From assembly GCF_963853765.1 (NCBI RefSeq), contig NC_088862.1:21700001-21764000 (forward strand): a stretch of DNA of 64,000 nucleotides. Reading direction: 5' to 3'. Origin of the DNA: Magallana gigas. Taxonomy: Eukaryota. The translations under genes were made by a program, and so were the position numbers. Of this stretch, positions 25,268 to 64,000 are shown piece by piece. Below the pieces are notes generated by a model. The model worked only from the letters and a program-made list of their open reading frames with translations, was not told the DNA's origin and searched no databases. The first letter of the stretch is position 1, and each line of letters begins with the position of its first letter.

Positions 25268-25440
25268 NNNNNNNNNNNNNNNNNNNNNNNNNNNNNNNNN
25301 NNNNNNNNNNNNNNNNNNNNNNNNNNNNNNNNNNNNNNNNNNNNNNNNNNNNNNNNNNNNNNNNNNNNNNNNNNNNNNNNNNNNNNNNNNNNNNNNNNNN
25401 NNNNNNNNNNNNNNNNNNNNNNNNNNNNNNNNNNNNNNNN
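25268..25440. other. Assembly gap (173 N)
   Basis: Run of N. Confidence 1.
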
Positions 25441-34793: not shown

Positions 34794-36894
34794 ATGGGAT
34801 TCACATTATTTCTTTTGGTGATTTTAATTCTTATTAGCAGTGGCCAGCTACAAGGTAAGATATTAGTGAAAACGGCATTTTATTCTTTCTTTAACTGTTA
34901 TTAAACTAACTTATTTGACTTAAAGTGCTCCGCGAGTACACGTTTTTAACTAGGTTGGTTAATTTTTCTTAAAATATTTAAAACTATTTTAATAACTATC
35001 AACAATTTAAATTAACATTTTTATTGGACAAGTGAATTTGAGGTAGTTAAATGACTTTATTCTGATTGATGTTTATAGATAAAGAAAACCGGTTTGGGAC
35101 GAAATTATAGCTCTTTTCGTAAAACTTTATAGAGCTGTTATTTTAATTAACTAAATTTCTTATATTAACAGTTGTATTAACCTTAAACTTAAAATATACT
35201 ACTAAATGAATAAAGGATCAATAAATGGTACAAATACTTTTTATCCATCGGAAATTTCTTTTATATTCATGTTCTTTGCAATGCAAACTTTTTGTAGATT
35301 TCTTTTGAAACGTTAACACAATAAAAAGGACGTTTCTTTGACTTTTTCCATACCTGTAAAATAAATAGAATTTGGACGTATTTTCAATGTATCGCAAAAA
35401 GTAACAAAAGCACGAATGTTTAAATAAATCCTATTTGTATAAGCATTCTGTTGGCATTATAAAAATAAAGAAAATTGATGTTTTCAAACATTGTTCTAGA
35501 AAAACACTTCTTTTCATATTGATAAATTTAAGGTATCTAAGTCCCTTTACTAGCGTCGTATTGGACAGAAGGTTATACAATCTGAAATTTTTCATTTTTT
35601 AAAATAAATACTAATAAATCAGGTGACAGTTCTACATGCAGTTACCCGTACAGACAGATTGGATCTTATTGCTATTATTTCAGCACAAATACAGCATCTT
35701 GGGATGAAGCTTATGTGAGTTTATTTTGTTTCTTTAAAACCTAAATCTCAACAAATTAGCAGTTGATGTCTTAATTTTTTTTTAATGCTACCAATTAATG
35801 TGATGATTTTACGTATATGCTTATTTGACATATTGATGACTTTGATAAGTGTCAAGCAAACCGTCACATTGTCATTACATTTTAGTTATAATGAAGATTT
35901 GTTTCAGCTTAATTGTTTACATAAAGGAGGATATTTGGCAAACTTAGAGGCTTTCAATGAATACATGATCTTACGGTCTTGGCTTGCTGGTATGNNNNNN
36001 NNNNNNNNNNNNNNNNNNNNNNNNNNNNNNNNNNNNNNNNNNNNNNNNNNNNNNNNNNNNNNNNNNNNNNNNNNNNNNNNNNNNNNNNNNNNNNNNNNNN
36101 NNNNNNNNNNNNNNNNNNNNNNNNNNNNNTCAAATGATATAAAGTTCATTTAAACTAACCAACACCTATATACATAAAAAACTAAAACGAGTTAAAATAT
36201 TATTTCTACTTTCAAACGAAAATGTGTTCATATAATGAACGATTTCTTGTTTGAAATAAGGTATCTTAAAAAAGACTTTTTCCATTCATGTGCATGCACA
36301 AAATGATTTTTTTCAAAGCATCATACTTAACTTTGCATTTGTTCTCAATGTGTAAACAACAAAAAATTATTTAATTTAGTGTTTTGCTGGAGTAAATCAA
36401 TTTTTTACTTCCGCTCAATGGAATCGGTGATTAAACGGTTTGTATTCTTTACATTGAAAACGGCAACTTAGGTCAGAAATAAGAAAACTGAATATTTAAA
36501 AATTAATATATTATATTAATTATTATAATACCTTTTAGATGATCGCAAAATCAGTACATTTGCATTGATTCCTCTTTGTTTAATAACGAATATTTAAATG
36601 GATGCTGACATAGTATTCATCAAAAATATAATTTGCTGAATTTAAGTACATTACAATTCATATTGTAACACTATTATAGGTCACCATTATTCAATTGGAG
36701 GACGTGATATTATGGAAGGAGATTGGAGATGGGTTAAAAATGGTACATTTACGAAGATGTCTTATTTTGCATTTGGACCAACGGAACCCACTGTTTCAAA
36801 ATCCCAAAAATGTCTTTGGCTTTATGCTGGTTACAATTATAATGTCATTGATGTAAGCTGTAGTTCTAAAGCCAGGTATATTTGTGAAAAATAA
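34794..36894 (+). CDS. C-type lectin copy 5 (secreted, ~153 aa, EPT motif); exons 34794-34854, 35623-35714, 35908-(runs into gap), 36680-36894
   Basis: MGFTLFLLVILILISSGQLQG-DSSTCSYPYRQIGSYCYY..SWDEAYLNCLHKGGYLA..YSIGG..TEPTVSKSQKCLWL..DVSCSSKARYICEK*. The 3' end of exon 3 is hidden by Ns. Confidence 0.85.
35995..36129. other. Assembly gap (135 N) overlapping the end of lectin copy 5 exon 3
   Basis: Run of N. Confidence 1.
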
Positions 36895-49530: not shown

Positions 49531-51192
49531 CTATCTGAGAAATTTTATTTTCTTTACATTGCTGTTCAAATATTCTGATACAAACAGATTGTTATTGTTG
49601 TCCACACATAAACCAGAGGGATACTCCAGATTACAGTTATCAATGTAACGGAGAAACTGTCCATTCTGATCCAGGATGTGAATACAATGGTTGTCACCGT
49701 CTGTTGTCAGGATACGACTCTGACTGTCTGTTGTGATACCACAGGGTTTAAATGGTTTGTTCTTGGTAACTGAGGGATGACCGATGTATCTCCATCTGAG
49801 TTTCCCGTCCTCATTAACCACTACAAGTGCTCTAGCCTCATTGTCAGCTACACAGATGTCATGGTTTCTGTTTTCAGTGATGTATTTAAAAGAACTATTC
49901 CCTGAGTACAGAGGTTTACCTTCATCATCAAACTGAATTGTTTGTTTCTTTGTAGATCCCAAGTAACGGACAACTTTGGATTGAGTTTTATCACCACTGT
50001 ACATGGTAACCAGGAGATCACCATTAGAGGTGACACACAGTTTACTAGGCTTCCATCCCTGTAATCTGATCAACTCTTCTGTCTGTCCATTATTTACTTT
50101 ATTCACTGTTCCTGATTTCCCGTCACTAAAAAGTAAATTCCCATCCCTGTCTACAGCTATATCATTGGGTCCTTGTTCTGATTTGTTGCTTACTGTATGA
50201 AGCAATTCACCTTTAATGTTAAAGCATTTGATATCCTTTGTCGATCCAAATGTCCAAACGCAATCTTCATTTAGATAGATATTAAAAACCTTTTTATAAC
50301 CTGTCTGTATTGTGGCAACAAGTTCCGGTTCATCCAGTAGTGTTTTGACTGAAGTGTTGGGTTGGTTTAGTGACAAGACATTCTCTTCTGTAGCAGTAGA
50401 CAAAGGAGTGATCTGTCCAAACAAATTATACAACTTTTGATGGTCTAATGGTTTGGGAATGAATGTTGGCAGTGTAATCTTCACTTTGGGTGGCAACTTG
50501 CTGAACTCTCTGATCTTTGAGCTGTATTCAATGGTAGGAGATACTTCAGTGGATTTCTTGAGTTCTTCTATGGCTAGTAATGTTTGTTTTATGAGAGTCT
50601 GTATCTGTTTGATTTCATCCAAGTGTTTCTGTAAAATGTCTCTGTGTTTTACTTTTATCTCATTGATTTCAGTTTTCATTTTATTGACAACGATGTCGAT
50701 TTCTCTGTGCCATTGCTCTCCTTGTTTGGACATTGCTGTCGTAAGTTTCTCATATCCTCCATTCAGGCTGGCAAGCTGATTTTCCAAGTCCAGTGCAATT
50801 TCTTCGTATGTAGGAGAGATAAGATTTTCTATCTTATTTGCCTCGTCCGCAATAGCATTTTTCTTTGTCGTGTAAACTTCTGAAACTTCTACAAAAATAT
50901 GTCCTTTATGTGTTTCTGATGCAGTACAAGAAGAACAAACAAATATGTCGTTGCAATTCTTGCACTGCAAGTCACAGTTTTTGCGTGAATGTGTCACACA
51001 TTTTGGGTAAATCAGAGTTGATCTTCGCTCCTTAAAAGGGACTATTTTATGTTTGTCATATCCATCTGAGATGTGATCTACTACACAGGGCTTGCAGAGG
51101 TTGACATGACAAAAGTCACAGTAGCTGTGTAAAATGGCGGTCTCACAAAGCTCACATCGGTGCACATCCTGGGCACTAGAATGAGGATCCAT
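49531..51192 (-). CDS. RING-less TRIM-like protein: B-box1, B-box2, coiled coil, NHL-repeat propeller (553 aa, single coding exon)
   Basis: CELC..CDFCHVNLCKPC..DH (B-box1); C..H..C..C..CSSC...H (B-box2); heptad-rich middle; NHL-type repeats PNDIAVDRDGNLL, PSKLCVTSNGDLL, PCGITTDSQSRIL, PSGLCVDNNNNLFV. A splice acceptor lies 7 nt upstream of the ATG. Confidence 0.93.
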   Translation of the reverse strand: MDPHSSAQDVHRCELCETAILHSYCDFCHVNLCKPCVVDHISDGYDKHKIVPFKERRSTLIYPKCVTHSRKNCDLQCKNCNDIFVCSSCTASETHKGHIFVEVSEVYTTKKNAIADEANKIENLISPTYEEIALDLENQLASLNGGYEKLTTAMSKQGEQWHREIDIVVNKMKTEINEIKVKHRDILQKHLDEIKQIQTLIKQTLLAIEELKKSTEVSPTIEYSSKIREFSKLPPKVKITLPTFIPKPLDHQKLYNLFGQITPLSTATEENVLSLNQPNTSVKTLLDEPELVATIQTGYKKVFNIYLNEDCVWTFGSTKDIKCFNIKGELLHTVSNKSEQGPNDIAVDRDGNLLFSDGKSGTVNKVNNGQTEELIRLQGWKPSKLCVTSNGDLLVTMYSGDKTQSKVVRYLGSTKKQTIQFDDEGKPLYSGNSSFKYITENRNHDICVADNEARALVVVNEDGKLRWRYIGHPSVTKNKPFKPCGITTDSQSRILTTDGDNHCIHILDQNGQFLRYIDNCNLEYPSGLCVDNNNNLFVSEYLNSNVKKIKFLR

Positions 51193-54373: not shown

Positions 54374-55230
54374 GATAGGAACGCCTTTTGCTGGTTTAAA
54401 CACGTATACATGTACGAGTACTACATTTTTGTCAGCTGAGTCCAATTCAGTTACAGACACAGACTGAAACCGTGTCATGAGATTGACCCACTTTGACGTC
54501 CTTCTTCTGTCAATTTCGCCCCATTTCTTTGTTGATAATTTATTAGAAAATAAATGTCTTTCTTTGAAAGGTCTAAAGAATTCCGGGTTCTCATGGTCTC
54601 TTTACCTAAAGGTTTCTATAACACCTGGAATTGGGTCACGGTTGAATGACATGATGCTTATTCTGTAAATTTACAGCAACTCGAAAAATAATTGACAATC
54701 TTAAAACGTAACATAAAACACCACTCCACAGAAAAAAATTGGAAGCTTATTATTTTTTTTTTGCAATATTTTTAAAAATGCAAATGAAAATGGCTATTCA
54801 CAAGGTGTCGATATAGATTAGTGCTAATTAAGTACAAATTATGATTTACACAAAGAATTGTTCATCAAGAATCATTGTACACTGTCATTCATTTCGTATA
54901 CAAGTATAATACAGTAGTATACATGAATACGATTCGATATTTCGGTTATGATATATATCTAATTCTGTTTAATTAACATGTTCTGTTTCTATTTGAGGTT
55001 AACAAAACAATTTTTTTAAAAACTAGAATAATTTGTTCTATATGTGCTTTAACTCGTTGTTCCACTTTCTTATTTTCTAGTTTGAAACAAAAAAGTGATT
55101 GACGTCGTTTTTAAGTACGCTATAGTATTCATCTGTCGGAATGTTTTGTCACGCACTTACATCAATGAGATTCTATTTGACATCACCTGACGTATCTTTT
55201 ATCGTAAAACATTACTTTCCGGTCTCTTAC
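54374..55230 (-). other. Candidate exons of a minus-strand transcript (non-coding exon ending at 55161; exon starting at 54663 with ATG at 54652)
   Basis: GAT|GTAAGT donor at 55160; TTTACAG acceptor before 54663; ~92-codon frame with a single in-frame TAA at 54604-54602. Confidence 0.35.
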
Positions 55231-58200
55231 TGAGGACACCTGTCTTGGCCTCCTCTCCTTTCTGAGGTAAATGCTGGGTACCACCACTCTAAATGCCGTG
55301 TCGAATTTTTCCGGTTAAAATGTTGCCTGGCACGCAGGGCTTCGTGGTTCGAGATAAATGTACATGTACATATCATTGATGGTCTTATAAATTAATCGGA
55401 AGACAGTTAATTTCATGTGATCTCTCATCGAGAACCAAATAAAAAACATGATAAGTTAAAACTAATAAGATTTATGTTATCATACATACTGAATTGTCCA
55501 TTTATTCCAACATGCACCCAGCTTAAATTGAAATCATGCAGTATCTTTTAAATAAAATTAAAGGTATACATTTAATCAAGATGTTATTTCCAAAACTAAA
55601 ACCAAAACTATTAAAACACAAGGTCTTATTCTCCCCCTTGTCTTACTCCTCAGGAGGCTGAATTTAGACTGTAACGCTTTTTCTTCTTGAGACAAAGGGC
55701 TCTATATACAGTCATAGGAAAAAACTTAATATAAAATAAAATATAACAAATTTAAGATATACTAGGAGTTTTCTTTACTAAATAAATTTTGATGACTAAC
55801 AAGTTTATGTTTAAAATTTTAGAGTATATTTGACCATGATGATCCAGCCTTCTAATTTGAATAATTATTTAGCACACATACTAGTAGGCAACCAATATCT
55901 ACCGTTCGGTCTTTTAGTTCATGATTTCTTAGGTTTAATTATACGAAGGTGGACATGTTGGTGGTTTTTTTTTAAAATAACATTTTTTATTGTTTCTTTT
56001 TTGTTAAATTTGGGGGGGGGGGGGGGGTTAATAATTTTTAGTGGGAAAATCACCATAGCTATAAGCTTTAATTTGAAAGTCCATCTGCATAATTGTTGAA
56101 TAGTCTGCATGGTTAAAATAAAGATCAATAATATGTGTTCAATGGTCTAGATTATTGTAGTTAAGTTAAAAAAATCTTTGATTTTAAACTTTTACTGTAA
56201 CATACACAAAGAAACTTGATTAGCATAGAATGACCAGGTTTTGCTGTATATTTGTAGCTCTATGAGAAAAATCGTGTTGATCCCTGCTTAAGATTTAGCA
56301 AGTAATATGTGAAATGTTTTTTTGACTCATTTTCAATTTTGATAACTATTTAAGGTGACGGTTTGAATGCAAATTTCTTTTTAATTGTTTTTTTTATGTT
56401 TGGGACATCTATGAATTAGCAATGCCCGCTTGTTGTCCATAAACTTAAAACGTAATCTAACTTCAAATTAAGTTTTTAGGCTTAAAATCAATAATTTGTT
56501 GTTTTCCTGGAAATGTCTTTATATAAATTCAATTGAATTGGAAAATTAATGGGATTGAAATATCATCAGCTCTAATGAAGACATCCCTTCATAAAACCTG
56601 TAAAAGCTCAAAAAATCTAAATCAGAGTAAAAAAAATTGTTCTATTGCTATAAATTATTACCCCATACGTATTTCAAATTTAGAACTTGAAATCTGTTAC
56701 CCCCCCCCCCCCCCCCCCCCTAAGGGATTTGATAATTTATCATTTTTGCAATAAACAACTATCTTATGAGAGATTAAAGGAACTGATGGTCAGCTGACAA
56801 ATGCTTTCTGTTAGATTAGACAACCACCAAAGCAGTGTGGTTAATGTCAAATTGTCGTCAAATTTCGTATGCAAACGTCCAAAAAGTGCTCATGTACATC
56901 AGTAATTTACATTAAATTGTCATTTATTATTTTCTTTTATTATTTATTAGTTTTTAATTCAATTTCATTTTTTTAATACCATTTATATACCATTTATACA
57001 TATTGTAAAATTCAATAATTTATTTACATTATAATCAATTTTCGGCTCCCCGCTTGTCTCAGTATATAGGTTATAAAACGTTTAAGCTTTATATTTAAAA
57101 AAGAATTAAATTAAATAATTCTCTTACAATAATCATTTGTTTTTTGTTTACTTCGTGTAAAATTTAATAAATCAATTGAGTTAACATTGGTACACTGGTG
57201 AAATGTGTCCATGTATAAGTGAAATAATTTTATTGACAATGTTCATATGAAATGGTACCATAATGTTTGTATGCATTTCATACGATACAGGTGAATAATA
57301 TGTCAAACGATTGCACATTGCAATGACTAATTTCTTAAGGGGGCTCGATGGTCGTGACCATTTTTAAAATACTGTATTGATCTCCTTTATAAGAAGAGCT
57401 CTATATGAAAATAAAGGAAAATAACTTAACATTTCAAATATGAAAATAAATATGGATTTATTCGTTGCTGTATAAAAGTTTACAGTTAAACAAACCAGTT
57501 CTTAAAATTTTAGGCAGATTTGGTGGTAAATTTGTCGACTATCCAGACTCCTCAAATTCAACCCAGATCTACCAATGTTTAATGCAATAAATAAAACTAT
57601 AACTGTAAAAGCAGAAATTTAAGGATAAATTTATTTCAATTCCCACAGGTAAAAGTGTATAGAATGCTCTTGGTGTTTCTGTATTGAATACAGAGGTAAA
57701 TTAATTCAAAGGTACATTACAAAAAGATAAAAATTATTAATATTTTGAAATACCTTCACTCATGTCTGGTAATTTCAGATGGACAAGTCAGATATCATTA
57801 ATGCAAGTATGATTATCAAGTATGTTACATAAATACACACATGCAAACAGCACATGTTCACTGTGGGTCTTTATCAATATTAACATAAACAAGATGAGTT
57901 TACGTGGATACACACCTATTTAGATTACAAACACGATGTTCTGTCAGGTTTTCATATGTCCCCGATAAGATGTGTTTATGTGCAGTATATATAAGGCAGC
58001 GTGTGAAGGGTAATAAACACTAGACAATACTGACATGCATACAACTGTCAACAGCTTGTGGGGCATGCACACGTTGACCCAAGCCAGGTCTCCATGACTT
58101 GTGTGCCTTTGATTTTTGAATAATACCTTTGGAATAATTATGGCATAGTTTGAAGAAAAACTTAAAAGACGTGAAAGAATCTATTTTATTTTTTAAATGG

Positions 58201-58621
58201 TTCTCATATTTTGACAAATGAAACAATATGTTATATTATTAATTAGAAACCCCTTTAATATCCAAAGGAAACAGAAAATCTACACTTTAAGAAAACAGCT
58301 GATTACAATTTTTGTAAAACTCAAGAGTCCATGAAAAAAATATCTAAATGAGACTTCAAATACAAAGAATTTACAGTGATTATTTTAGTAAAAAAAACAA
58401 CAATAATCATATAAAATTGTTTACATATTAATCACTGGAATTTAAGGTTTTGAAATAACTTTATTTAATCATTAGAAACAACAAAAACTACATTCCGAAA
58501 ACAAGCTGACCTCAAATTTTGAAAAATAATTATAAGGCGTCTATCGAAATCCTCAAAATTATCAAAATTAACATAATTTAAACAATTTAAAAAAAAGTCA
58601 TTTTTGTTACAATTCTTTTAA

Positions 58622-59437
58622 CGAGGCCGAGTACAGAACGAGTACGCACGCTTTCGCGCAGCGTTTCATTTGTATTGTGACGTCATCTTTTTGCTTGGTT
58701 GACGCCATGGCGTGATAGTTTCAACTGCAGATATTCAGCGAAAATTGTTGAAAATATCTCGTTTGATGCGTAAAAATAATGTTATATTGTGGAATAAACA
58801 TAAATGTCTCGAAGTATAAGCTATATTTGGGCTCGGGTCGAAAACGTGAAGAGGGTTCAGCAAGCCTAGCCTTCTGTCACGTTTTCTTAACCCGCCTAAA
58901 TATAGCTAAATTCATATATTTCAGACAGTAACCATGTATTTTATATCAATGACCCTTAATATGTGATGTTATATATTTTTTTATTACTTGAATATGTCTG
59001 AATGTTTTAATAATACTATTTAGATCACCTTTTCCGCTTTTGTGAAATAAAAAATAGCCATTATCTGACAAATCTGGGAAATTGGGCATACAAAAATCAA
59101 CTTTGATAAGACCCCTTGAACAAACCAGGAGGTAAAAGGTTTTTTTTATTTGACCATTAGATGCCTTTTAGCAATAACTTTAATATGTAGAACAGAAGAA
59201 GAAATCCCTAGGGCAGAAGTTTTGAAAAAATGTAAAAAATATGCAAAATTGATACATTTCAAGCAAAATCCCATAGGGTCATATGTTAAAGATTAACACA
59301 CTTTGAGATGACCCCCTAAACAAACGGTGTGGTAAATGTCTTATTTTTTAATCTTAAAATAATAATTATATCAGTAGAAATTCATGTAAAAAGTTTCATC
59401 CAAAAATCTAGGGCAGAACAAATTAGACCCGGCCTCG
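58622..59437. mobile_element. TTAA-flanked non-autonomous element (~815 bp) containing a foldback at 58819-58907
   Basis: TTAA-CGAGGCCG ... CGGCCTCG-TTAA (inverted match extends to TTTTAACGAGGCCG); nested AGCTATATTTGG...GAAAACGTGA / TCACGTTTTC...CTAAATATAGCT. Confidence 0.65.
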
Positions 59438-59541
59438 TTAAAAGGCATGGGAAAGTTCCATGAGAGGTTTCTTCGACGAGATTTTCTTTACTTTATTCAA
59501 TGCATCATTATCATGCAGTATGAGTATATATCATTATTACA

Positions 59542-59664
59542 GTTACTTGATCCAAAGGGGCGGATCACGTTGAGTTGCCATGCATGGATCATAAGATCAA
59601 ACGAGAATCAAAGCGTCTCGTTTGTTCTGATGATCTGCGCCTGGCAACGAGAGGATCAAGTAAC
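59542..59664. repeat. Imperfect foldback hairpin
   Basis: GTTACTTGATCC / GGATCAAGTAAC outer arms; GTTGCCA / TGGCAAC and AAACGAGA / TCTCGTTT inner arms. Confidence 0.65.
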
Positions 59665-61422
59665 GTCATAAAGATAATTTCATTATATACCCTTTTCCAT
59701 TCAAAAGTTTTAATTACAAAACAGACGTTATTTAATGCATACTATGTCATTTGGTGATACGGAATCGGAAAACCACAGTGTGGTGATCCGGAATATCGGA
59801 TCACACTCTATAATTTTGACAGTATCAAGAAGGGAAATTGATGGGTGTATATTAATATTTCTTGTTCGATTGATGGGACGTACTGAAGTTATGCTAAGAT
59901 AATGTGCAACTTATAAAACCTCAACGAAATAAATATATATGTAATACATTGGTTACACAAAACACTAAACTCCCCTAAAATAAAAACTTACTAACATATT
60001 TTGACAATTAACAAGGGTTGATGAGGGCAATTATCTTAATTCGTGACTATGCTAGACATTTCAACATATATAAAGAAATACCAAGGCAATAAGAGATTGT
60101 CTCGACACAAAAAAAATACACGTTATGTATAAGAGAAAAGAGATGCGTTATCAATTAGCTTAATTTATCGCATAAATTTTTACTTCAAAGAAATATTATT
60201 TTATACATTAAATATGTTTTTTCTTTATTTCAACAATACAAATTTTAACAATTTATGTACAATTTATGTACAATTGCAATTTCTGATTTTACAATATTAT
60301 TTTAAATTCAAGAAAATGCAAACATAAATTCTTTACTAATAAGTCTGAAATAGTTTTGTTTTAAAATAACGCTTACATAGACTAGCTTAAAAACATTATA
60401 ATGTGAATAATAAAAATGACATCAGTTTAATGGTCAGTAAATGAGAAAACAAAGAAATAACAAATTTCTTTCCAATTAAGATGCCATCACGTGAACTGTA
60501 TTATTGATAAGGAACAACAAATTAGATAATTATAGCTTACTTATTTGAAAACTCTAGTCAGAGAAATAGCAAAAAAAAATCATATGTCATTATCTATAGG
60601 TATAAAAGTCTGAAAATAGAAAGCCATGAAATGTACATAAGGCATTGTAAACAAATTGTCATGACACGACGAACACAAACATATATACAAACTGATCACT
60701 TTTTCCCTTCACGCCCATTCTGTTAAACAACGGCCAAATCATGTTTAGTAGACCATTGACATGAAACATTTTTTTTCCTCAGACCAAAACAAACAAGCCA
60801 CTGCCTTTTGTGGTCAACAGAAACTTTTTCTCGGTCACGCAGGACGGTCCGATTCCTTCGAGTCATCAAAGCGTGACCATGTTTTGGTATAAATTGAAAT
60901 CCACCCATGTATAATTGGTCAGAAAGTTGTCATTGTTTGAGGATTGAGTGTTTTGTGTATTCAGTGTCTTGTTGTAAGTTTTCACTGATTTTTTAAAGAC
61001 ATATATGCTATTGATAATCATACTTTTTGAATTGCAGTTTACCCAAAAAAAGTCTGTGATTTTATTTCCTGTTATGCAATATTATAATCACCAATATAAA
61101 ATATGATATCAACTGATTGGAGAAGGATGAATTCATAGTCGTTCAAATAACAAAAAAAATACTTAAACTTTTAAGAACATTTTGAAAAAAATGTAAATAC
61201 TAAACAGTTCCTGTTGATCTGAATGAAAAAAAAACAGATAAAGAAAATAAACGCAACGTACAATTATATAGAAAAAAAGTACTACGTCTTGTTACCACGT
61301 TTTTGGAGATGGAGATGAATTCCTGATACAAATTTCTTATGTAAATACCTATAGGGCTTTCCAGTTGTCCAAGGGTTTGATTACACTGTTGGATTATTAC
61401 AGGCACTATTGGTTGTAACACA

Positions 61423-63554
61423 ATGAAGAACTTCCTTCTGATCGTCCTGTTGGTCTGTCTGTTTGTGGCTTATGTGGTGGAAGCAAATGCACGACAAGCT
61501 TTAGGTGAGTATATACATGTAAAACTGTGGCTTTAACTTACCTTCTGAGTCCCATTTGTTTGGAATTTTTATTTTCATCTATACTGATCTTCCTATTCCT
61601 ATCTACAAAATCCCGATTCTGTAGAGTTTTAATGCACTATTTACTGTTTGATCTATTAATCCATTGAATCCCGTTTTTTTTGTATCAGCCGGTAGTTTTG
61701 TTATGTCGTAAATTTTGAATTTACAGGGTGGCAGCATATACAAAATTTACAACATGACAGTTTTATTTCTGCCATTTGAATCCCAATTTTTTTTTAACAA
61801 CAACTAATCATTTACTGGGGTTTCATTTAATTAATATTCATTACTATTACTAGTTATTTGTGGATTTCGTTGTTGAGTATATTTGCGAAATCCTAGTTCA
61901 TCGAAAAAAGTTACGAATATCTGACGAACACCTGACGATGGCTTTTTTGAATGCGACTACTATTCGTACAGAAGAAACGTGTCCTCTTATACAGAGTTCG
62001 ACTCGATCCACAAATTTTAATGCGAACTTATATTTTTTTGAAAGCACAGTTGTGTTAGATTCTAAGAAATAATTTTTTTACGATTTAAAAAAAAAATTCA
62101 TCAGTAACTTCATCGACTACTTTTTTCTCTTTTTACTTAAAGCTGAATATCAATTGTCTAATATGAATTTTGATACTTTTTCTTCTCTACGTTTGTCCTT
62201 CGAAAGATTAGTACTTAAAGAAAGGAAATAACTTACTTTGCTTTTTTTCTTTGTAAATGCTTCCTTCCACGAAAATACACGTACACGTATCGGCTACAAT
62301 TGTATTTTTCTTTTTTTGTATTTTGATATTATAAGAGTCCTGAAGCTACATGTAGCTTTTGTTTTCTCTTTTTTTTTTTGGGCTGTTCGAGAAATCATAA
62401 TATTCAAGCATAGAAAATGAATAAAAATAATGAGAAATTACATAAAAAGAACCATTTTTGATTATACATTAATCTCAGTTAGGAAGATAAATACCAAATG
62501 AATTTAGTAGTTTTTTTTTATCATGGTCTAAGTTAACACTCTAAAAAGTGAATCATTGAACGATTTTAATTTATTCTCTCTATTTTCTCTGTCTTATCAG
62601 TTTAGCATTTTTGGCTTGTATTTTTTTGTATACTATACTGCACATGTATGTACCACCTGCTTAAATTATATATGCTTAAATTCGTATCACCCACGATAAC
62701 CCCAAATTAACGATATGGACAATAAAACACGTTTGTTAACCTTTAGAAGTCCACGTGGATATTTACCATTTCTCGGTGATAAATGATTACCTTTTTACTG
62801 ATGGCCTTCATATGAACTTCCAGGGAAGGACTAGTTTAAACTGGTTTCCGTCTCGGCAAACGCACTCAGTCGTGCCCTTTTATGATTTTTTCCTCTCTTA
62901 GTAACGCAAGCAGCAAATCATTTCTAACCTCTTATATATGAAAAACAATAAATCTGTCAAAAAACTTGGGACGGGAGAATCTGTCAATGTCAATCCACAT
63001 CGCCGGGTTTAACCTACATTGAATTTTAAAACTGACAAATAATATGGACCAATAAAATAAAAACTAAACGGCATCAAACTTTAACTGTTTGCAGGCGGTA
63101 TTAGCATTTGAATAGTCTTGAATGTAAAAAAAAAAAAGATAGAGTGATTTTTTTTACGATTTCATATTTATTTGCTTTTCAGATTTAATCAACAGAACGT
63201 CTCAATTTTTTTTAATGCAAATCTTTTACATAAAATACTAGCGTGTAGTTTTAAAATGGAATACGTAAATGGCAAGATTAACATTTTTCATGGTTTGCAT
63301 TTGCTCAATCTCAAAAAACGTTCCGCATGAATACGGCAAACAAATCTAATTCAAAAATTACATTCAGTACGTTAATAAAGAGCTTTTATTTATCGTGTTC
63401 TTGTGTTTAGTTATAAAGAAATAGTTTAATTGTGATTTTTTGTTTTACAGCCTTGATGTATCTGATGAGATCCCGCATGTTTCATGGGATGGGCGGAGGA
63501 CTATTTCAGAGACTAATGCCACTTTACTTCATGTCCGAGGCCGATCTACTCTGA
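61423..63554 (+). CDS. Small secreted Met-rich peptide, 61 aa; exons 61423-61504 and 63451-63554
   Basis: MKNFLLIVLLVCLFVAYVVEA-NARQAL|ALMYLMRSRMFHGMGGGLFQRLMPLYFMSEADLL*. Strong donor G|GTGAGT, acceptor TTTTGTTTTACAG, phase-1 match; upstream acceptor at 61402; AATAAA at ~63596. Confidence 0.8.
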
Positions 63555-64000
63555 AAAAAAACCCACCACCAACTTGATGTCAGGAAGGTTTTGATAATAA
63601 AGGGCCAATCCATCTGTCATAAATCACACCACCACCTTAAAAATTATACATTAATTTTGTCATTTCATCATTAAAAATTATATTACATGAATGTACATTT
63701 GTATGCTTGTAACATATTTTATATTGCATAACTTTTTTGTATTTGCGTCGTTAAGAATTTAGTTCATAGATAAATGATGATGAAAATAAAATTTTGAACA
63801 TAAATGTGTTTGGTTTATCGAATTACAAAATACAAAAAAAAATGGACGTGGAAAACTCCGCATCCTGAGGTTCAACATGATGTTTGTATCATCCAATTAC
63901 AACATCGACTGATTCACGGTTTAACACATGTTGAAAAATCACACACGATTCACATATGATACTGATACACATGATTTTACGTGACTATGTTTGATCCTAA

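What the first reader, a model, noticed from the sequence alone, without database searches (positions are those of the whole stretch)
61423..63554. Hidden two-exon gene for a 61-aa secreted, Met-rich, Cys-free peptide
Seen: a clean signal peptide ending V-E-A spliced in phase to a 34-codon exon, with both exons too short for the ORF track. The predicted 40-aa mature peptide has 6 Met, 4 Arg, a GMGGG linker, no Cys or Lys, and an acidic EADLL tail. Known: Met/Gly-rich secreted proteins occur in bivalve hinge ligament and shell matrix (e.g. abductin, Met-rich nacre proteins), and bivalves also have short cationic host-defence peptides. Inference: this may be an unannotated structural or defence peptide; I cannot assign it to a named family.
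Basis: partly seen in the sequence, partly recalled or inferred. Interest (0 to 1): 0.7.

Follow-up and report, generated by a model that had tools for sequence, protein, structure and literature searches.

The report
Expressed orphan secreted-peptide gene in oyster
The predicted splice is real and the small gene is transcribed, most likely making a 61-residue precursor of a 40-residue methionine-rich secreted peptide, but the Pacific oyster protein databases already list it as an uncharacterised protein and its function remains unknown.

Summary
ATG 61423, donor 61504|GT, acceptor AG|63451 and stop 63552-63554 give an in-frame 61-codon ORF. Assembled contigs from two independent studies skip exactly 61505-63450.

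The gene has three exons, not two. A non-coding leader exon ending at 60973 is spliced to 61403. The gene is single-copy with no intronless copy, so the joined form comes from RNA.

It is not unannotated. The 61-aa core is identical to the C-terminal 61 residues of UniProt K1Q044 (83 aa) and A0A8W8M5U3 (88 aa), both "Uncharacterized protein" of Magallana (Crassostrea) gigas. Their N-terminal extensions disagree with each other. One is broken by a stop codon in this assembly, so the 61-aa reading with an N-terminal signal peptide is the better model.

No homologue turned up outside M. gigas by word-indexed search, exhaustive HMMER, Pfam, PDB, Atlas or a metagenome scan. Mollusc genomes could not be searched.

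The abductin, amphipathic antimicrobial-peptide and prohormone readings each fail a defining feature. My best reading is a lineage-restricted secreted hydrophobic helix-GGG-helix peptide of unknown role. Interest is modest.

The parts
60888..60893 (+). TATAAA, putative core promoter element, about 30 nt upstream of the inferred transcription start (~60920)
   Evidence: Read from the sequence. Its function is inferred only. The promoter stretch 60404-60919 is 97% identical to the second haplotype L004, against 92-93% for the introns.
60920..60973 (+). Exon 1, a non-coding leader. The 3' end is shown; the 5' end is inferred from the TATA position.
   Evidence: The X1 contig carries 27 letters ahead of 61403. 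They match 60947-60973 exactly and uniquely and are followed by the donor GTAAGT.
60974..61402 (+). Intron 1 (GT..AG, 429 nt)
   Evidence: The acceptor is ttattacAG|GC at 61401-61402. In L004 the AG lies one base further on.
61403..61504 (+). Exon 2: 5' UTR 61403-61422 and CDS 61423-61504 (27 codons plus 1 base)
   Evidence: Contigs of X1 (from 61403) and X9 (from 61432) cover it and join it to 63451.
61423..61485 (+). Predicted signal peptide of 21 residues: n-region MKN, 16-residue hydrophobic core, c-region V-E-A
   Evidence: Check of the (-3,-1) rule and hydropathy. SignalP was not available, so cleavage is inferred.
61505..63450 (+). Intron 2 (GT..AG, 1946 nt, phase 1)
   Evidence: Skipped in the contigs of X1 and X9. 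No Rfam family lies in it.
63451..63626 (+). Exon 3: CDS 63451-63554 including TGA, 3' UTR, AATAAA at 63596. A longer 3' form runs to about 63700-63720 (ATTAAA at 63670).
   Evidence: Contigs end at 63626 (X2), 63633 (X1), 63698 (X9) and 63720 (X2). Poly(A) signals are listed.
55512..55563 (+). Possible alternative first exon used by database model A0A8W8M5U3. In this assembly it carries an in-frame TAA at 55524-55526.
   Evidence: The model's N-terminal residues IEIMQYLLNKIK map here, followed by a GT donor. No read evidence was obtained for it.

Best explanation
This is a real, single-copy, three-exon gene, most likely of the Pacific oyster Magallana (Crassostrea) gigas. It makes a short (about 330-420 nt) spliced, polyadenylated mRNA. 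Shown: both splice junctions, the 3' ends, and the single-copy status. Inferred with good support: translation starts at the first AUG (61423) and yields a 61-residue pre-peptide (P0001:23-83). Inferred: its first 21 residues act as a cleavable signal peptide cut after V-E-A. That would release a 40-residue, Cys-free, Lys-free peptide rich in Met, Leu, Phe and Arg, predicted to form two helices joined by a GMGGG hinge. In helix 1 four Met (i, i+3, i+7, i+11) line one face. Helix 2 is moderately amphipathic and ends in an acidic EADLL tail. Speculative: because 58% of its residues are hydrophobic but its amphipathicity is low, the peptide most likely works by hydrophobic association outside the cell, either self-association or binding to a lipid, matrix or protein partner through a Met-lined surface. 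Pore formation as a classical antimicrobial helix, or processing into small neuropeptides, seems less likely. No relative was found outside M. gigas, so it is best treated as a lineage-restricted (orphan) secreted peptide.
For: The junction 61504/63451 is present in contigs from two studies, and the leader exon is joined at 60973/61403. Exon 2 DNA and the exon 3 peptide each occur once in the 564-Mb genome, so there is no retrocopy and the joined form is RNA-derived. The ORF starts at the first ATG of the mRNA with A at -3; CDS GC is 45-48% against 28-30% in the introns; an ORF of 61 or more codons has about a 5% chance. The core is identical in two independent database models from other assemblies. 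It is intact in the second haplotype L004 over codons 1-51, with one synonymous change and H39R. Between the two haplotypes, exons are more conserved than introns (4/227 vs 179/2400 differing columns, p=3e-4), as is the promoter. The upstream extensions are not conserved as coding sequence: there is a TAA in the alternative exon here; a 1-nt insertion in L004 turns the upstream ATG 60907 into a 9-codon ORF; and the K1Q044 extension cannot be found in this genome. The single-sequence AlphaFold2 model shows helices 2-42 and 44-55.
Against: There is no proteomic or ribosome evidence that the ORF is translated. No orthologue from another species was available, so purifying selection on the protein is not shown; substitutions alone give CDS vs introns p=0.28. 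The RNA status of runs X1-X14 is a guess by the tool. The one certified poly(A) RNA run (X21, about 1% sampled) had no reads on the exons. In run X2 the very deep exon-3 contig continues into 10 nt of intron and then 30 unplaced letters instead of exon 2. Signal-peptide cleavage was judged by rule only. AlphaFold2 confidence is low over the mature part (pLDDT 49-70). The proposed mode of action rests on composition alone.
Confidence: 0.62

Rival explanations
1. The transcript is a short spliced non-coding RNA and the 61-codon ORF is a chance feature.
For: About 5% of 332-nt stretches of this composition hold an ORF this long. T-rich sequence readily encodes hydrophobic, signal-like starts. There is no homologue and no protein-level evidence. 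The substitution rate in the CDS is not significantly below that of the introns.
Against: The ORF starts at the first AUG in good context and spans the splice junction in phase. It has a full n/h/c signal-peptide layout with small residues at -3/-1. GC rises to 45-48% exactly over the CDS. There is no indel or stop in six independent sources, although indels are common in the flanking introns. No Rfam family, and so no recognised snoRNA, lies in the introns.
Confidence: 0.12
2. The true product is the longer protein of the database models (80-88 aa), in which the hydrophobic segment is an internal signal-anchor. The protein would then be a small single-pass membrane protein, not a free secreted peptide.
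For: Two automatic models extend the frame upstream. The frame is open through the 5' UTR of exon 2 and through exon 1. In this assembly the alternative exon still offers an in-frame ATG at 55536 after its TAA.
Against: The two extensions share nothing upstream of TIGCNT. One starts with a codon run that is broken by TAA here, and the other cannot be located in this genome. The X1 contig carries exon 1 from at least 60947, not the 9-nt piece the 88-aa model needs. ATG 60907 lies only 19 nt after the TATAAA and is followed by a stop in L004. A hydrophobic core of 16 residues is short for a membrane anchor.
Confidence: 0.1
3. It is a structural component of the hinge ligament or shell organic matrix, with its Met residues used for packing or cross-linking.
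For: FHGMGGGL resembles one unit of the abductin repeat GGFGGMGGGX (PMC9999432). Met-rich regions are common in insoluble shell and ligament proteins of a pearl oyster (PMC7591529). The protein has a secretory signal.
Against: Gly is 10% rather than about 58%. There is one unit rather than tandem repeats. There is no Cys, and no Lys for the proposed Met-Lys cross-links. The peptide is predicted helical, not a random coil. Neither the accession nor the tryptic peptides appear in the supplements held for an oyster shell multi-omics paper. A five-residue motif is weak evidence.
Confidence: 0.1
4. It is a linear alpha-helical host-defence peptide of the cecropin or piscidin type: signal peptide, cationic helix-hinge-helix, short acidic C-terminal tail.
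For: The overall layout and size are the same: a precursor of about 60 aa, a Cys-free mature part of about 40 aa, a Gly hinge, 4 Arg and an acidic tail. The comparison with cecropin and piscidin layouts is from my own knowledge.
Against: The maximum 18-residue hydrophobic moment is 0.36, and 0.03-0.26 over helix 1. Magainin 2, melittin and pleurocidin give 0.51-0.55 computed the same way. Net charge is only about +2. There are no paralogues, whereas defence peptides usually form families. There is no sequence similarity to any known peptide.
Confidence: 0.08
5. It is an extracellular signalling ligand, conceivably for the divergent orphan 7TM receptor encoded about 6.5 kb beyond the window end on the same strand.
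For: A 393-aa single-exon ORF at L003:6504-7685 aligns end to end with the rhodopsin-family profile, though below threshold (E=0.029). The peptide is secreted and about the size of helical peptide hormones.
Against: Adjacency alone is weak, because orphan receptors are numerous in oyster genomes (my own knowledge). There are no dibasic processing sites and no amidation signal. No binding test was run.
Confidence: 0.05

Closest known systems
UniProt K1Q044_MAGGI (83 aa) and A0A8W8M5U3_MAGGI (88 aa), 'Uncharacterized protein', Magallana gigas
   Same: Their C-terminal 61 residues are identical to the spliced product of 61423-61504 + 63451-63551. It is the same gene.
   Different: Both carry N-terminal extensions (22 and 27 residues) that differ from each other. 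These are not supported by the X1 contig, by this assembly (TAA at 55524) or by haplotype L004. With the extensions in place, the signal peptide is hidden.
Abductin (scallop hinge-ligament elastomer; Cao, Wang and Bayley 1997, as summarised in PMC9999432)
   Same: A secreted, Met-containing mollusc protein. The stretch FHGMGGGL matches 7 of 8 positions of the repeat core FGGMGGGX.
   Different: Abductin has about 58% Gly, many tandem repeats, 116 mature residues, a Cys/Tyr-bearing Ala-rich N-terminus and a random-coil structure. Here there is one unit, 10% Gly, no Cys and a helical prediction.
Linear helix-hinge-helix defence peptides (cecropins; piscidin/pleurocidin precursors)
   Same: The precursor is about 60-68 aa. 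The signal peptide is followed directly by a Cys-free mature peptide of 25-40 aa with a Gly-containing hinge, and some have an acidic C-terminal piece (my own knowledge).
   Different: There is no sequence similarity. Amphipathicity and net charge are much lower. The peptide is Met/Arg-based rather than Lys/His-based, and the gene is a singleton.
Mets motifs of Cu(I)-handling proteins (Ctr1 ectodomain, CusF, PcoC/CopC)
   Same: Clustered MxxM and MxxxM spacing with a neighbouring His (M-Y-L-M-R-S-R-M-F-H-G-M). This resemblance is recalled from memory and is only a lead.
   Different: There is no homology. The His is replaced by Arg in haplotype L004. Metal binding was not tested.

Membership tests
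Abductin | Very high glycine content (about 58 mol%) | tested here: not met
   4 Gly in 40 residues = 10%. The reference value is from PMC9999432.
Abductin | Tandem repeats of the decapeptide GGFGGMGGGX | tested here: not met
   There is a single FHGMGGGL unit and no repeat.
Abductin | Ala-rich N-terminus with two conserved Cys and two Tyr after the signal peptide | tested here: not met
   The mature part has no Cys. The feature is described.
Abductin | Expression in, and extraction from, the inner hinge ligament | not testable with these tools
   Run and tissue names are coded, and no ligament proteome was available.
Secretory pre-peptide (cleavable N-terminal signal peptide) | Positive n-region, hydrophobic h-region of 7-16 residues, small uncharged residues at -3 and -1 | tested here: met
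   MKN, then the 16-residue core F4-V19, then V-E-A|N. Alternative sites lie after A23 and A28. This is a rule-based check only; SignalP was not available.
Classical amphipathic alpha-helical antimicrobial peptides | High helical hydrophobic moment together with a clear net positive charge | tested here: not met
   The maximum muH over 18 residues is 0.36, against 0.51-0.55 for magainin 2, melittin and pleurocidin. Net charge is about +2.
Classical amphipathic alpha-helical antimicrobial peptides | Antimicrobial activity, or induction on infection | not testable with these tools
   This needs a synthetic peptide and expression data.
Neuropeptide / prohormone precursors | Dibasic (KR/RR) or furin-type cleavage sites flanking the peptides, often a Gly amidation signal | tested here: not met
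   There is no Lys, no RR, and R-S-R lacks Arg at P4. The C-terminus is DLL-stop without Gly. The strings are absent from the oyster neuropeptide literature searched.
Pfam PF15873 (DUF4730) | Score at or above the gathering threshold (27 bits) | tested here: not met
   15.6-16.8 bits, E about 0.01-0.02, confined to the hydrophobic signal segment.
Mets-motif Cu(I) binding segments | Clustered MxxM/MxM/MxxxM motifs | tested here: met
   M9, M12, M16, M20 of the mature peptide plus H18. The pattern is present, but it is also what a Met-lined helix face would give.
Mets-motif Cu(I) binding segments | Measured Cu(I)/Ag(I) binding | not testable with these tools
   This needs a binding assay. The H39R variant in L004 argues that the His is dispensable.

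The most novel reading that the evidence does not exclude
The gene encodes a new, oyster-restricted class of secreted Met-lined helical hairpin peptide. Its Met stripe (M-x2-M-x3-M-x3-M, next to His/Arg) would give it a specific extracellular chemistry: Cu(I) or oxidant buffering in haemolymph or mucus, or binding of a hydrophobic partner such as the neighbouring orphan 7TM receptor. On this reading it would not be a mere structural filler or a non-functional orphan.
Probability: 0.1. Interest if true: 0.6.

Novelty: new member of a known kind. Interest (0 to 1): 0.3.

Why it matters
Small secreted peptides are the gene class that automatic annotation handles worst. Here two public models of the same oyster gene disagree on the start codon, and both bury a clean signal peptide. 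Correcting the model to 61 aa, secreted, turns an anonymous "uncharacterized protein" into a 40-residue peptide that can be synthesised and tested. Its composition is unusual: 15% Met, no Cys, no Lys. If it proves to be conserved among oysters and tissue-specific, it would be a cheap entry point to Met-based extracellular chemistry (metal or oxidant handling, matrix assembly) in an aquaculture species. If not, it is one more young orphan gene.

Tried and rejected
(1) Homology. The word-indexed search with the 40-aa exon-3 ORF found nothing because the database entries are longer than the size window. With the 61-aa core it found only the gene's own entry and P0003. P0003 turned out to be exon 2 read through into the intron on a genomic Logan contig, not a homologue. 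Exhaustive HMMER of the 33-aa exon-3 peptide against 1.84 billion representatives gave only K1Q044; hits down to roughly 31 bits would have been listed. The metagenome scan found no relative. The ESM Atlas gave no usable hit. PDB sequences gave none. Foldseek of the model against Swiss-Prot AlphaFold models gave none. Pfam gave only the sub-threshold DUF4730 and Sugar_tr hits on hydrophobic stretches.

(2) Paralogues. Exon 2 DNA, the exon 2 peptide and the exon 3 peptide each hit only this locus in the genome.

(3) Literature. Full-text searches found no paper with the peptide strings, K1Q044, A0A8W8M5U3, DUF4730 or SRR6063460. Two shell-proteome papers have no supplements held, and a third holds none of the strings.

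(4) snoRNA-host reading. There is no Rfam family in 55000-64000 apart from a chance bacterial sRNA hit.

(5) The 30 unplaced letters on the X2 contig are found neither in the window nor in the genome and remain unexplained.

(6) The N-terminal 22 residues of K1Q044 could not be placed in the window or the genome; a query this short makes the result inconclusive.

(7) Complex prediction was not used. Adjacency to the 7TM ORF is the only reason to suspect binding, and the tool's own guidance says that is not enough.

(8) A bacterial-type promoter/terminator scan is irrelevant to a eukaryotic gene and was ignored.

The N runs at 25268-25440 and 35995-36129 were left alone.

Full report
**1. The observation**

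- ATG at 61423, in the context ACACAATGA.
- A donor TAG|GTGAGTAT after 61504.
- A pyrimidine-rich acceptor ...TTTTGTTTTACAG|CC before 63451.
- A phase-1 junction, with 82 + 104 nt giving 61 codons and TGA at 63552-63554.
- AATAAA 42 nt after the stop (63596).

The product is the sequence stored as P0001:23-83. After V-E-A the remaining 40 residues hold 6 Met, 4 Arg, 8 Leu and 4 Gly, with no Cys and no Lys, a GMGGG stretch and an EADLL end.

**2. Is it transcribed and spliced?**

The run search with exon 3 plus 3' UTR returned 20 holders from 10 studies. Fourteen of them are small assemblies that the tool guesses to be RNA. I laid four runs on 61200-63800.

Contigs of X1 (study P1) and X9 (study P3) both skip 1946 nt with GT..AG ends. 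This is exactly the 61504/63451 junction; the tool's "cut +2" form is the same joint. Depth is confined to the exons.

The genome holds exon 2 and exon 3 once each and has no intronless copy. The joined form must therefore come from spliced RNA.

The 3' ends of the contigs fall at 63626-63633, after AATAAA 63596, and at 63698-63720, after ATTAAA 63670. This suggests two poly(A) sites.

The one run certified as poly(A) RNA and kept as raw reads (X21) was sampled at about 1% and gave no exon reads, which says little.

**3. A third exon**

The X1 contig carries 27 letters ahead of 61403. They match 60947-60973 exactly and uniquely. They are followed by GTAAGT, and 61401-61402 is an AG in a good acceptor.

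So there is a non-coding leader exon ending at 60973. A TATAAA lies at 60888-60893, which places the expected start near 60920; this is an inference. With that start, ATG 61423 is the first AUG of an mRNA of about 330 nt.

**4. Coding or not?**

An ORF of 61 or more codons turns up in about 5% of random genomic or shuffled 332-nt stretches, so length alone is weak evidence. Several further features add to it:
- The ORF starts at the first AUG and has A at -3.
- It has a complete signal-peptide layout: MKN, a 16-residue hydrophobic core, and V-E-A with small residues at -3/-1.
- GC is 45-48% over the CDS, against 35-37% in the UTRs and 28-30% in the introns.
- The frame is intact in six independent sources: this assembly, two database models from other assemblies, the X1 and X9 contigs, and L004.

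L004 is a 3.1-kb genomic Logan contig (SRR6063460) that is 94% identical to 60404-63520. I cannot tell whether it is a divergent haplotype or a close congener.

Within the CDS part that L004 covers (codons 1-51) there is one synonymous change (Leu27) and one replacement, H39R (CAT to CGG), with no indel. The introns show 97 substitutions and 82 gap columns in about 2400 nt.

Exons as a whole and the promoter are significantly better conserved than the introns (p=3e-4 and 6e-5). Substitutions in the CDS alone are not (p=0.28). I put the chance that this is a chance ORF on a non-coding RNA at about 12%.

**5. It is already in the databases, with doubtful starts**

The exhaustive HMMER search with the 33-aa exon-3 peptide found one protein, P0001. 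This is UniProt K1Q044_MAGGI, 83 aa. Its 90% cluster also holds P0002 = A0A8W8M5U3_MAGGI, 88 aa. Both are "Uncharacterized protein" of Magallana gigas.

Their last 61 residues equal the spliced product exactly. This also identifies the organism as M. gigas or something extremely close to it.

Upstream of the shared TIGCNT (the in-frame 5' UTR of exon 2) the two models have nothing in common.

*The 88-aa model.* It uses an exon at 55512-55563, spliced to a 9-nt piece at 60965-60973. In this assembly its fifth codon is TAA. The X1 contig shows exon 1 running from at least 60947, not a 9-nt piece.

*The 83-aa model.* Its extension cannot be found in the window or the genome.

*The upstream ATG in exon 1.* The only upstream in-frame ATG in the exon-1 form (60907) lies 19 nt after the TATAAA. 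In L004 a 1-nt insertion makes it run into a TGA after nine codons.

The extensions therefore look like longest-ORF artefacts, and the 61-aa product is the conserved one. It is right in the sense that the public models conceal the signal peptide.

**6. What is it?**

No relative was found by any route (listed under Tried and rejected). The gene has no paralogue, so no family can be named.

*Structure.* Single-sequence AlphaFold2 gives helices 2-42 and 44-55. Confidence is high only over the signal segment.

*Amphipathicity.* The helical hydrophobic moment of the mature part is low. It is 0.03-0.26 across helix 1 and at most 0.36 overall, against 0.51-0.55 for three classical helical defence peptides computed in the same way.

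*Met stripe.* The four Met of helix 1 fall at i, i+3, i+7 and i+11, so they lie on one helix face.

*Processing.* There is no dibasic site and no amidation signal.

Measured against abductin as described in PMC9999432, the peptide shares one FxGMGGGx unit. It fails on Gly content, repeats, Cys and predicted conformation.

I therefore commit to the following reading. This is a cleaved secretory pre-peptide whose 40-residue product acts by hydrophobic association outside the cell, either self-association or binding to a lipid, matrix or protein partner through a Met-lined face. The step from composition to mechanism is inference only.

The matrix, defence, signalling and membrane-anchor readings are kept as rivals with low weights.

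**7. Verdict**

The gene is a lineage-restricted orphan as far as protein databases can show, but cross-species conservation could not be tested with the tools at hand.

Novelty is limited, because the gene is listed and many such orphans exist in mollusc genomes. The useful result is the corrected gene model and a short, testable peptide.

Noticed in passing
L003:6504-7685 (+), i.e. 6.5-7.7 kb beyond the window's end: A 393-aa single-exon ORF with seven hydrophobic segments. It aligns end to end (positions 2-260 of 260) with the rhodopsin-family 7tm_1 profile, but below threshold (E=0.029, 14.3 bits). It looks like a very divergent orphan receptor next to the peptide gene on the same strand.
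   Followed up: partly
window 49531-51192 (-): A 553-aa uninterrupted ORF with B-box zinc finger and NHL repeat matches, a TRIM-NHL-like protein. It is the nearest upstream protein-coding neighbour.
   Followed up: partly
window 43440-44276 (-): A 278-aa ORF whose C-terminal part gives a sub-threshold DUF4773 match (E=1.7e-4, 22.5 bits against a cut-off of 27).
   Followed up: partly
window 63441, run X2: A deep contig (depth about 200) covers exon 3. It then continues through the last 10 nt of intron 2 into 30 letters (ATTTAGTAGCCCTACAGTTTCATTATCGCC) that occur nowhere in the window or the genome. It may be an intron insertion allele or an assembly chimera; this is unexplained.
   Followed up: partly
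window 61401-61403 and L004: In the second haplotype the acceptor of exon 2 reads CAAG instead of CAGG, so the AG moves one base downstream. The same haplotype has a 1-nt insertion in exon 1 (at 60935). Both changes lie in the 5' UTR.
   Followed up: yes
window 63555-63565: The A-run just after the stop codon varies in length: it is 1-2 nt shorter in the contigs of X1, X2 and X9. There are also 3' UTR variants at 63565 and 63678 and a conservative I7V change (61441 A>G) in X1.
   Followed up: no
window 55512-55563: This is the possible alternative first exon used by the 88-aa database model. The model reads GAA (Glu) where this assembly has TAA, so there is a stop/sense polymorphism in the supposed coding start.
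   Followed up: partly
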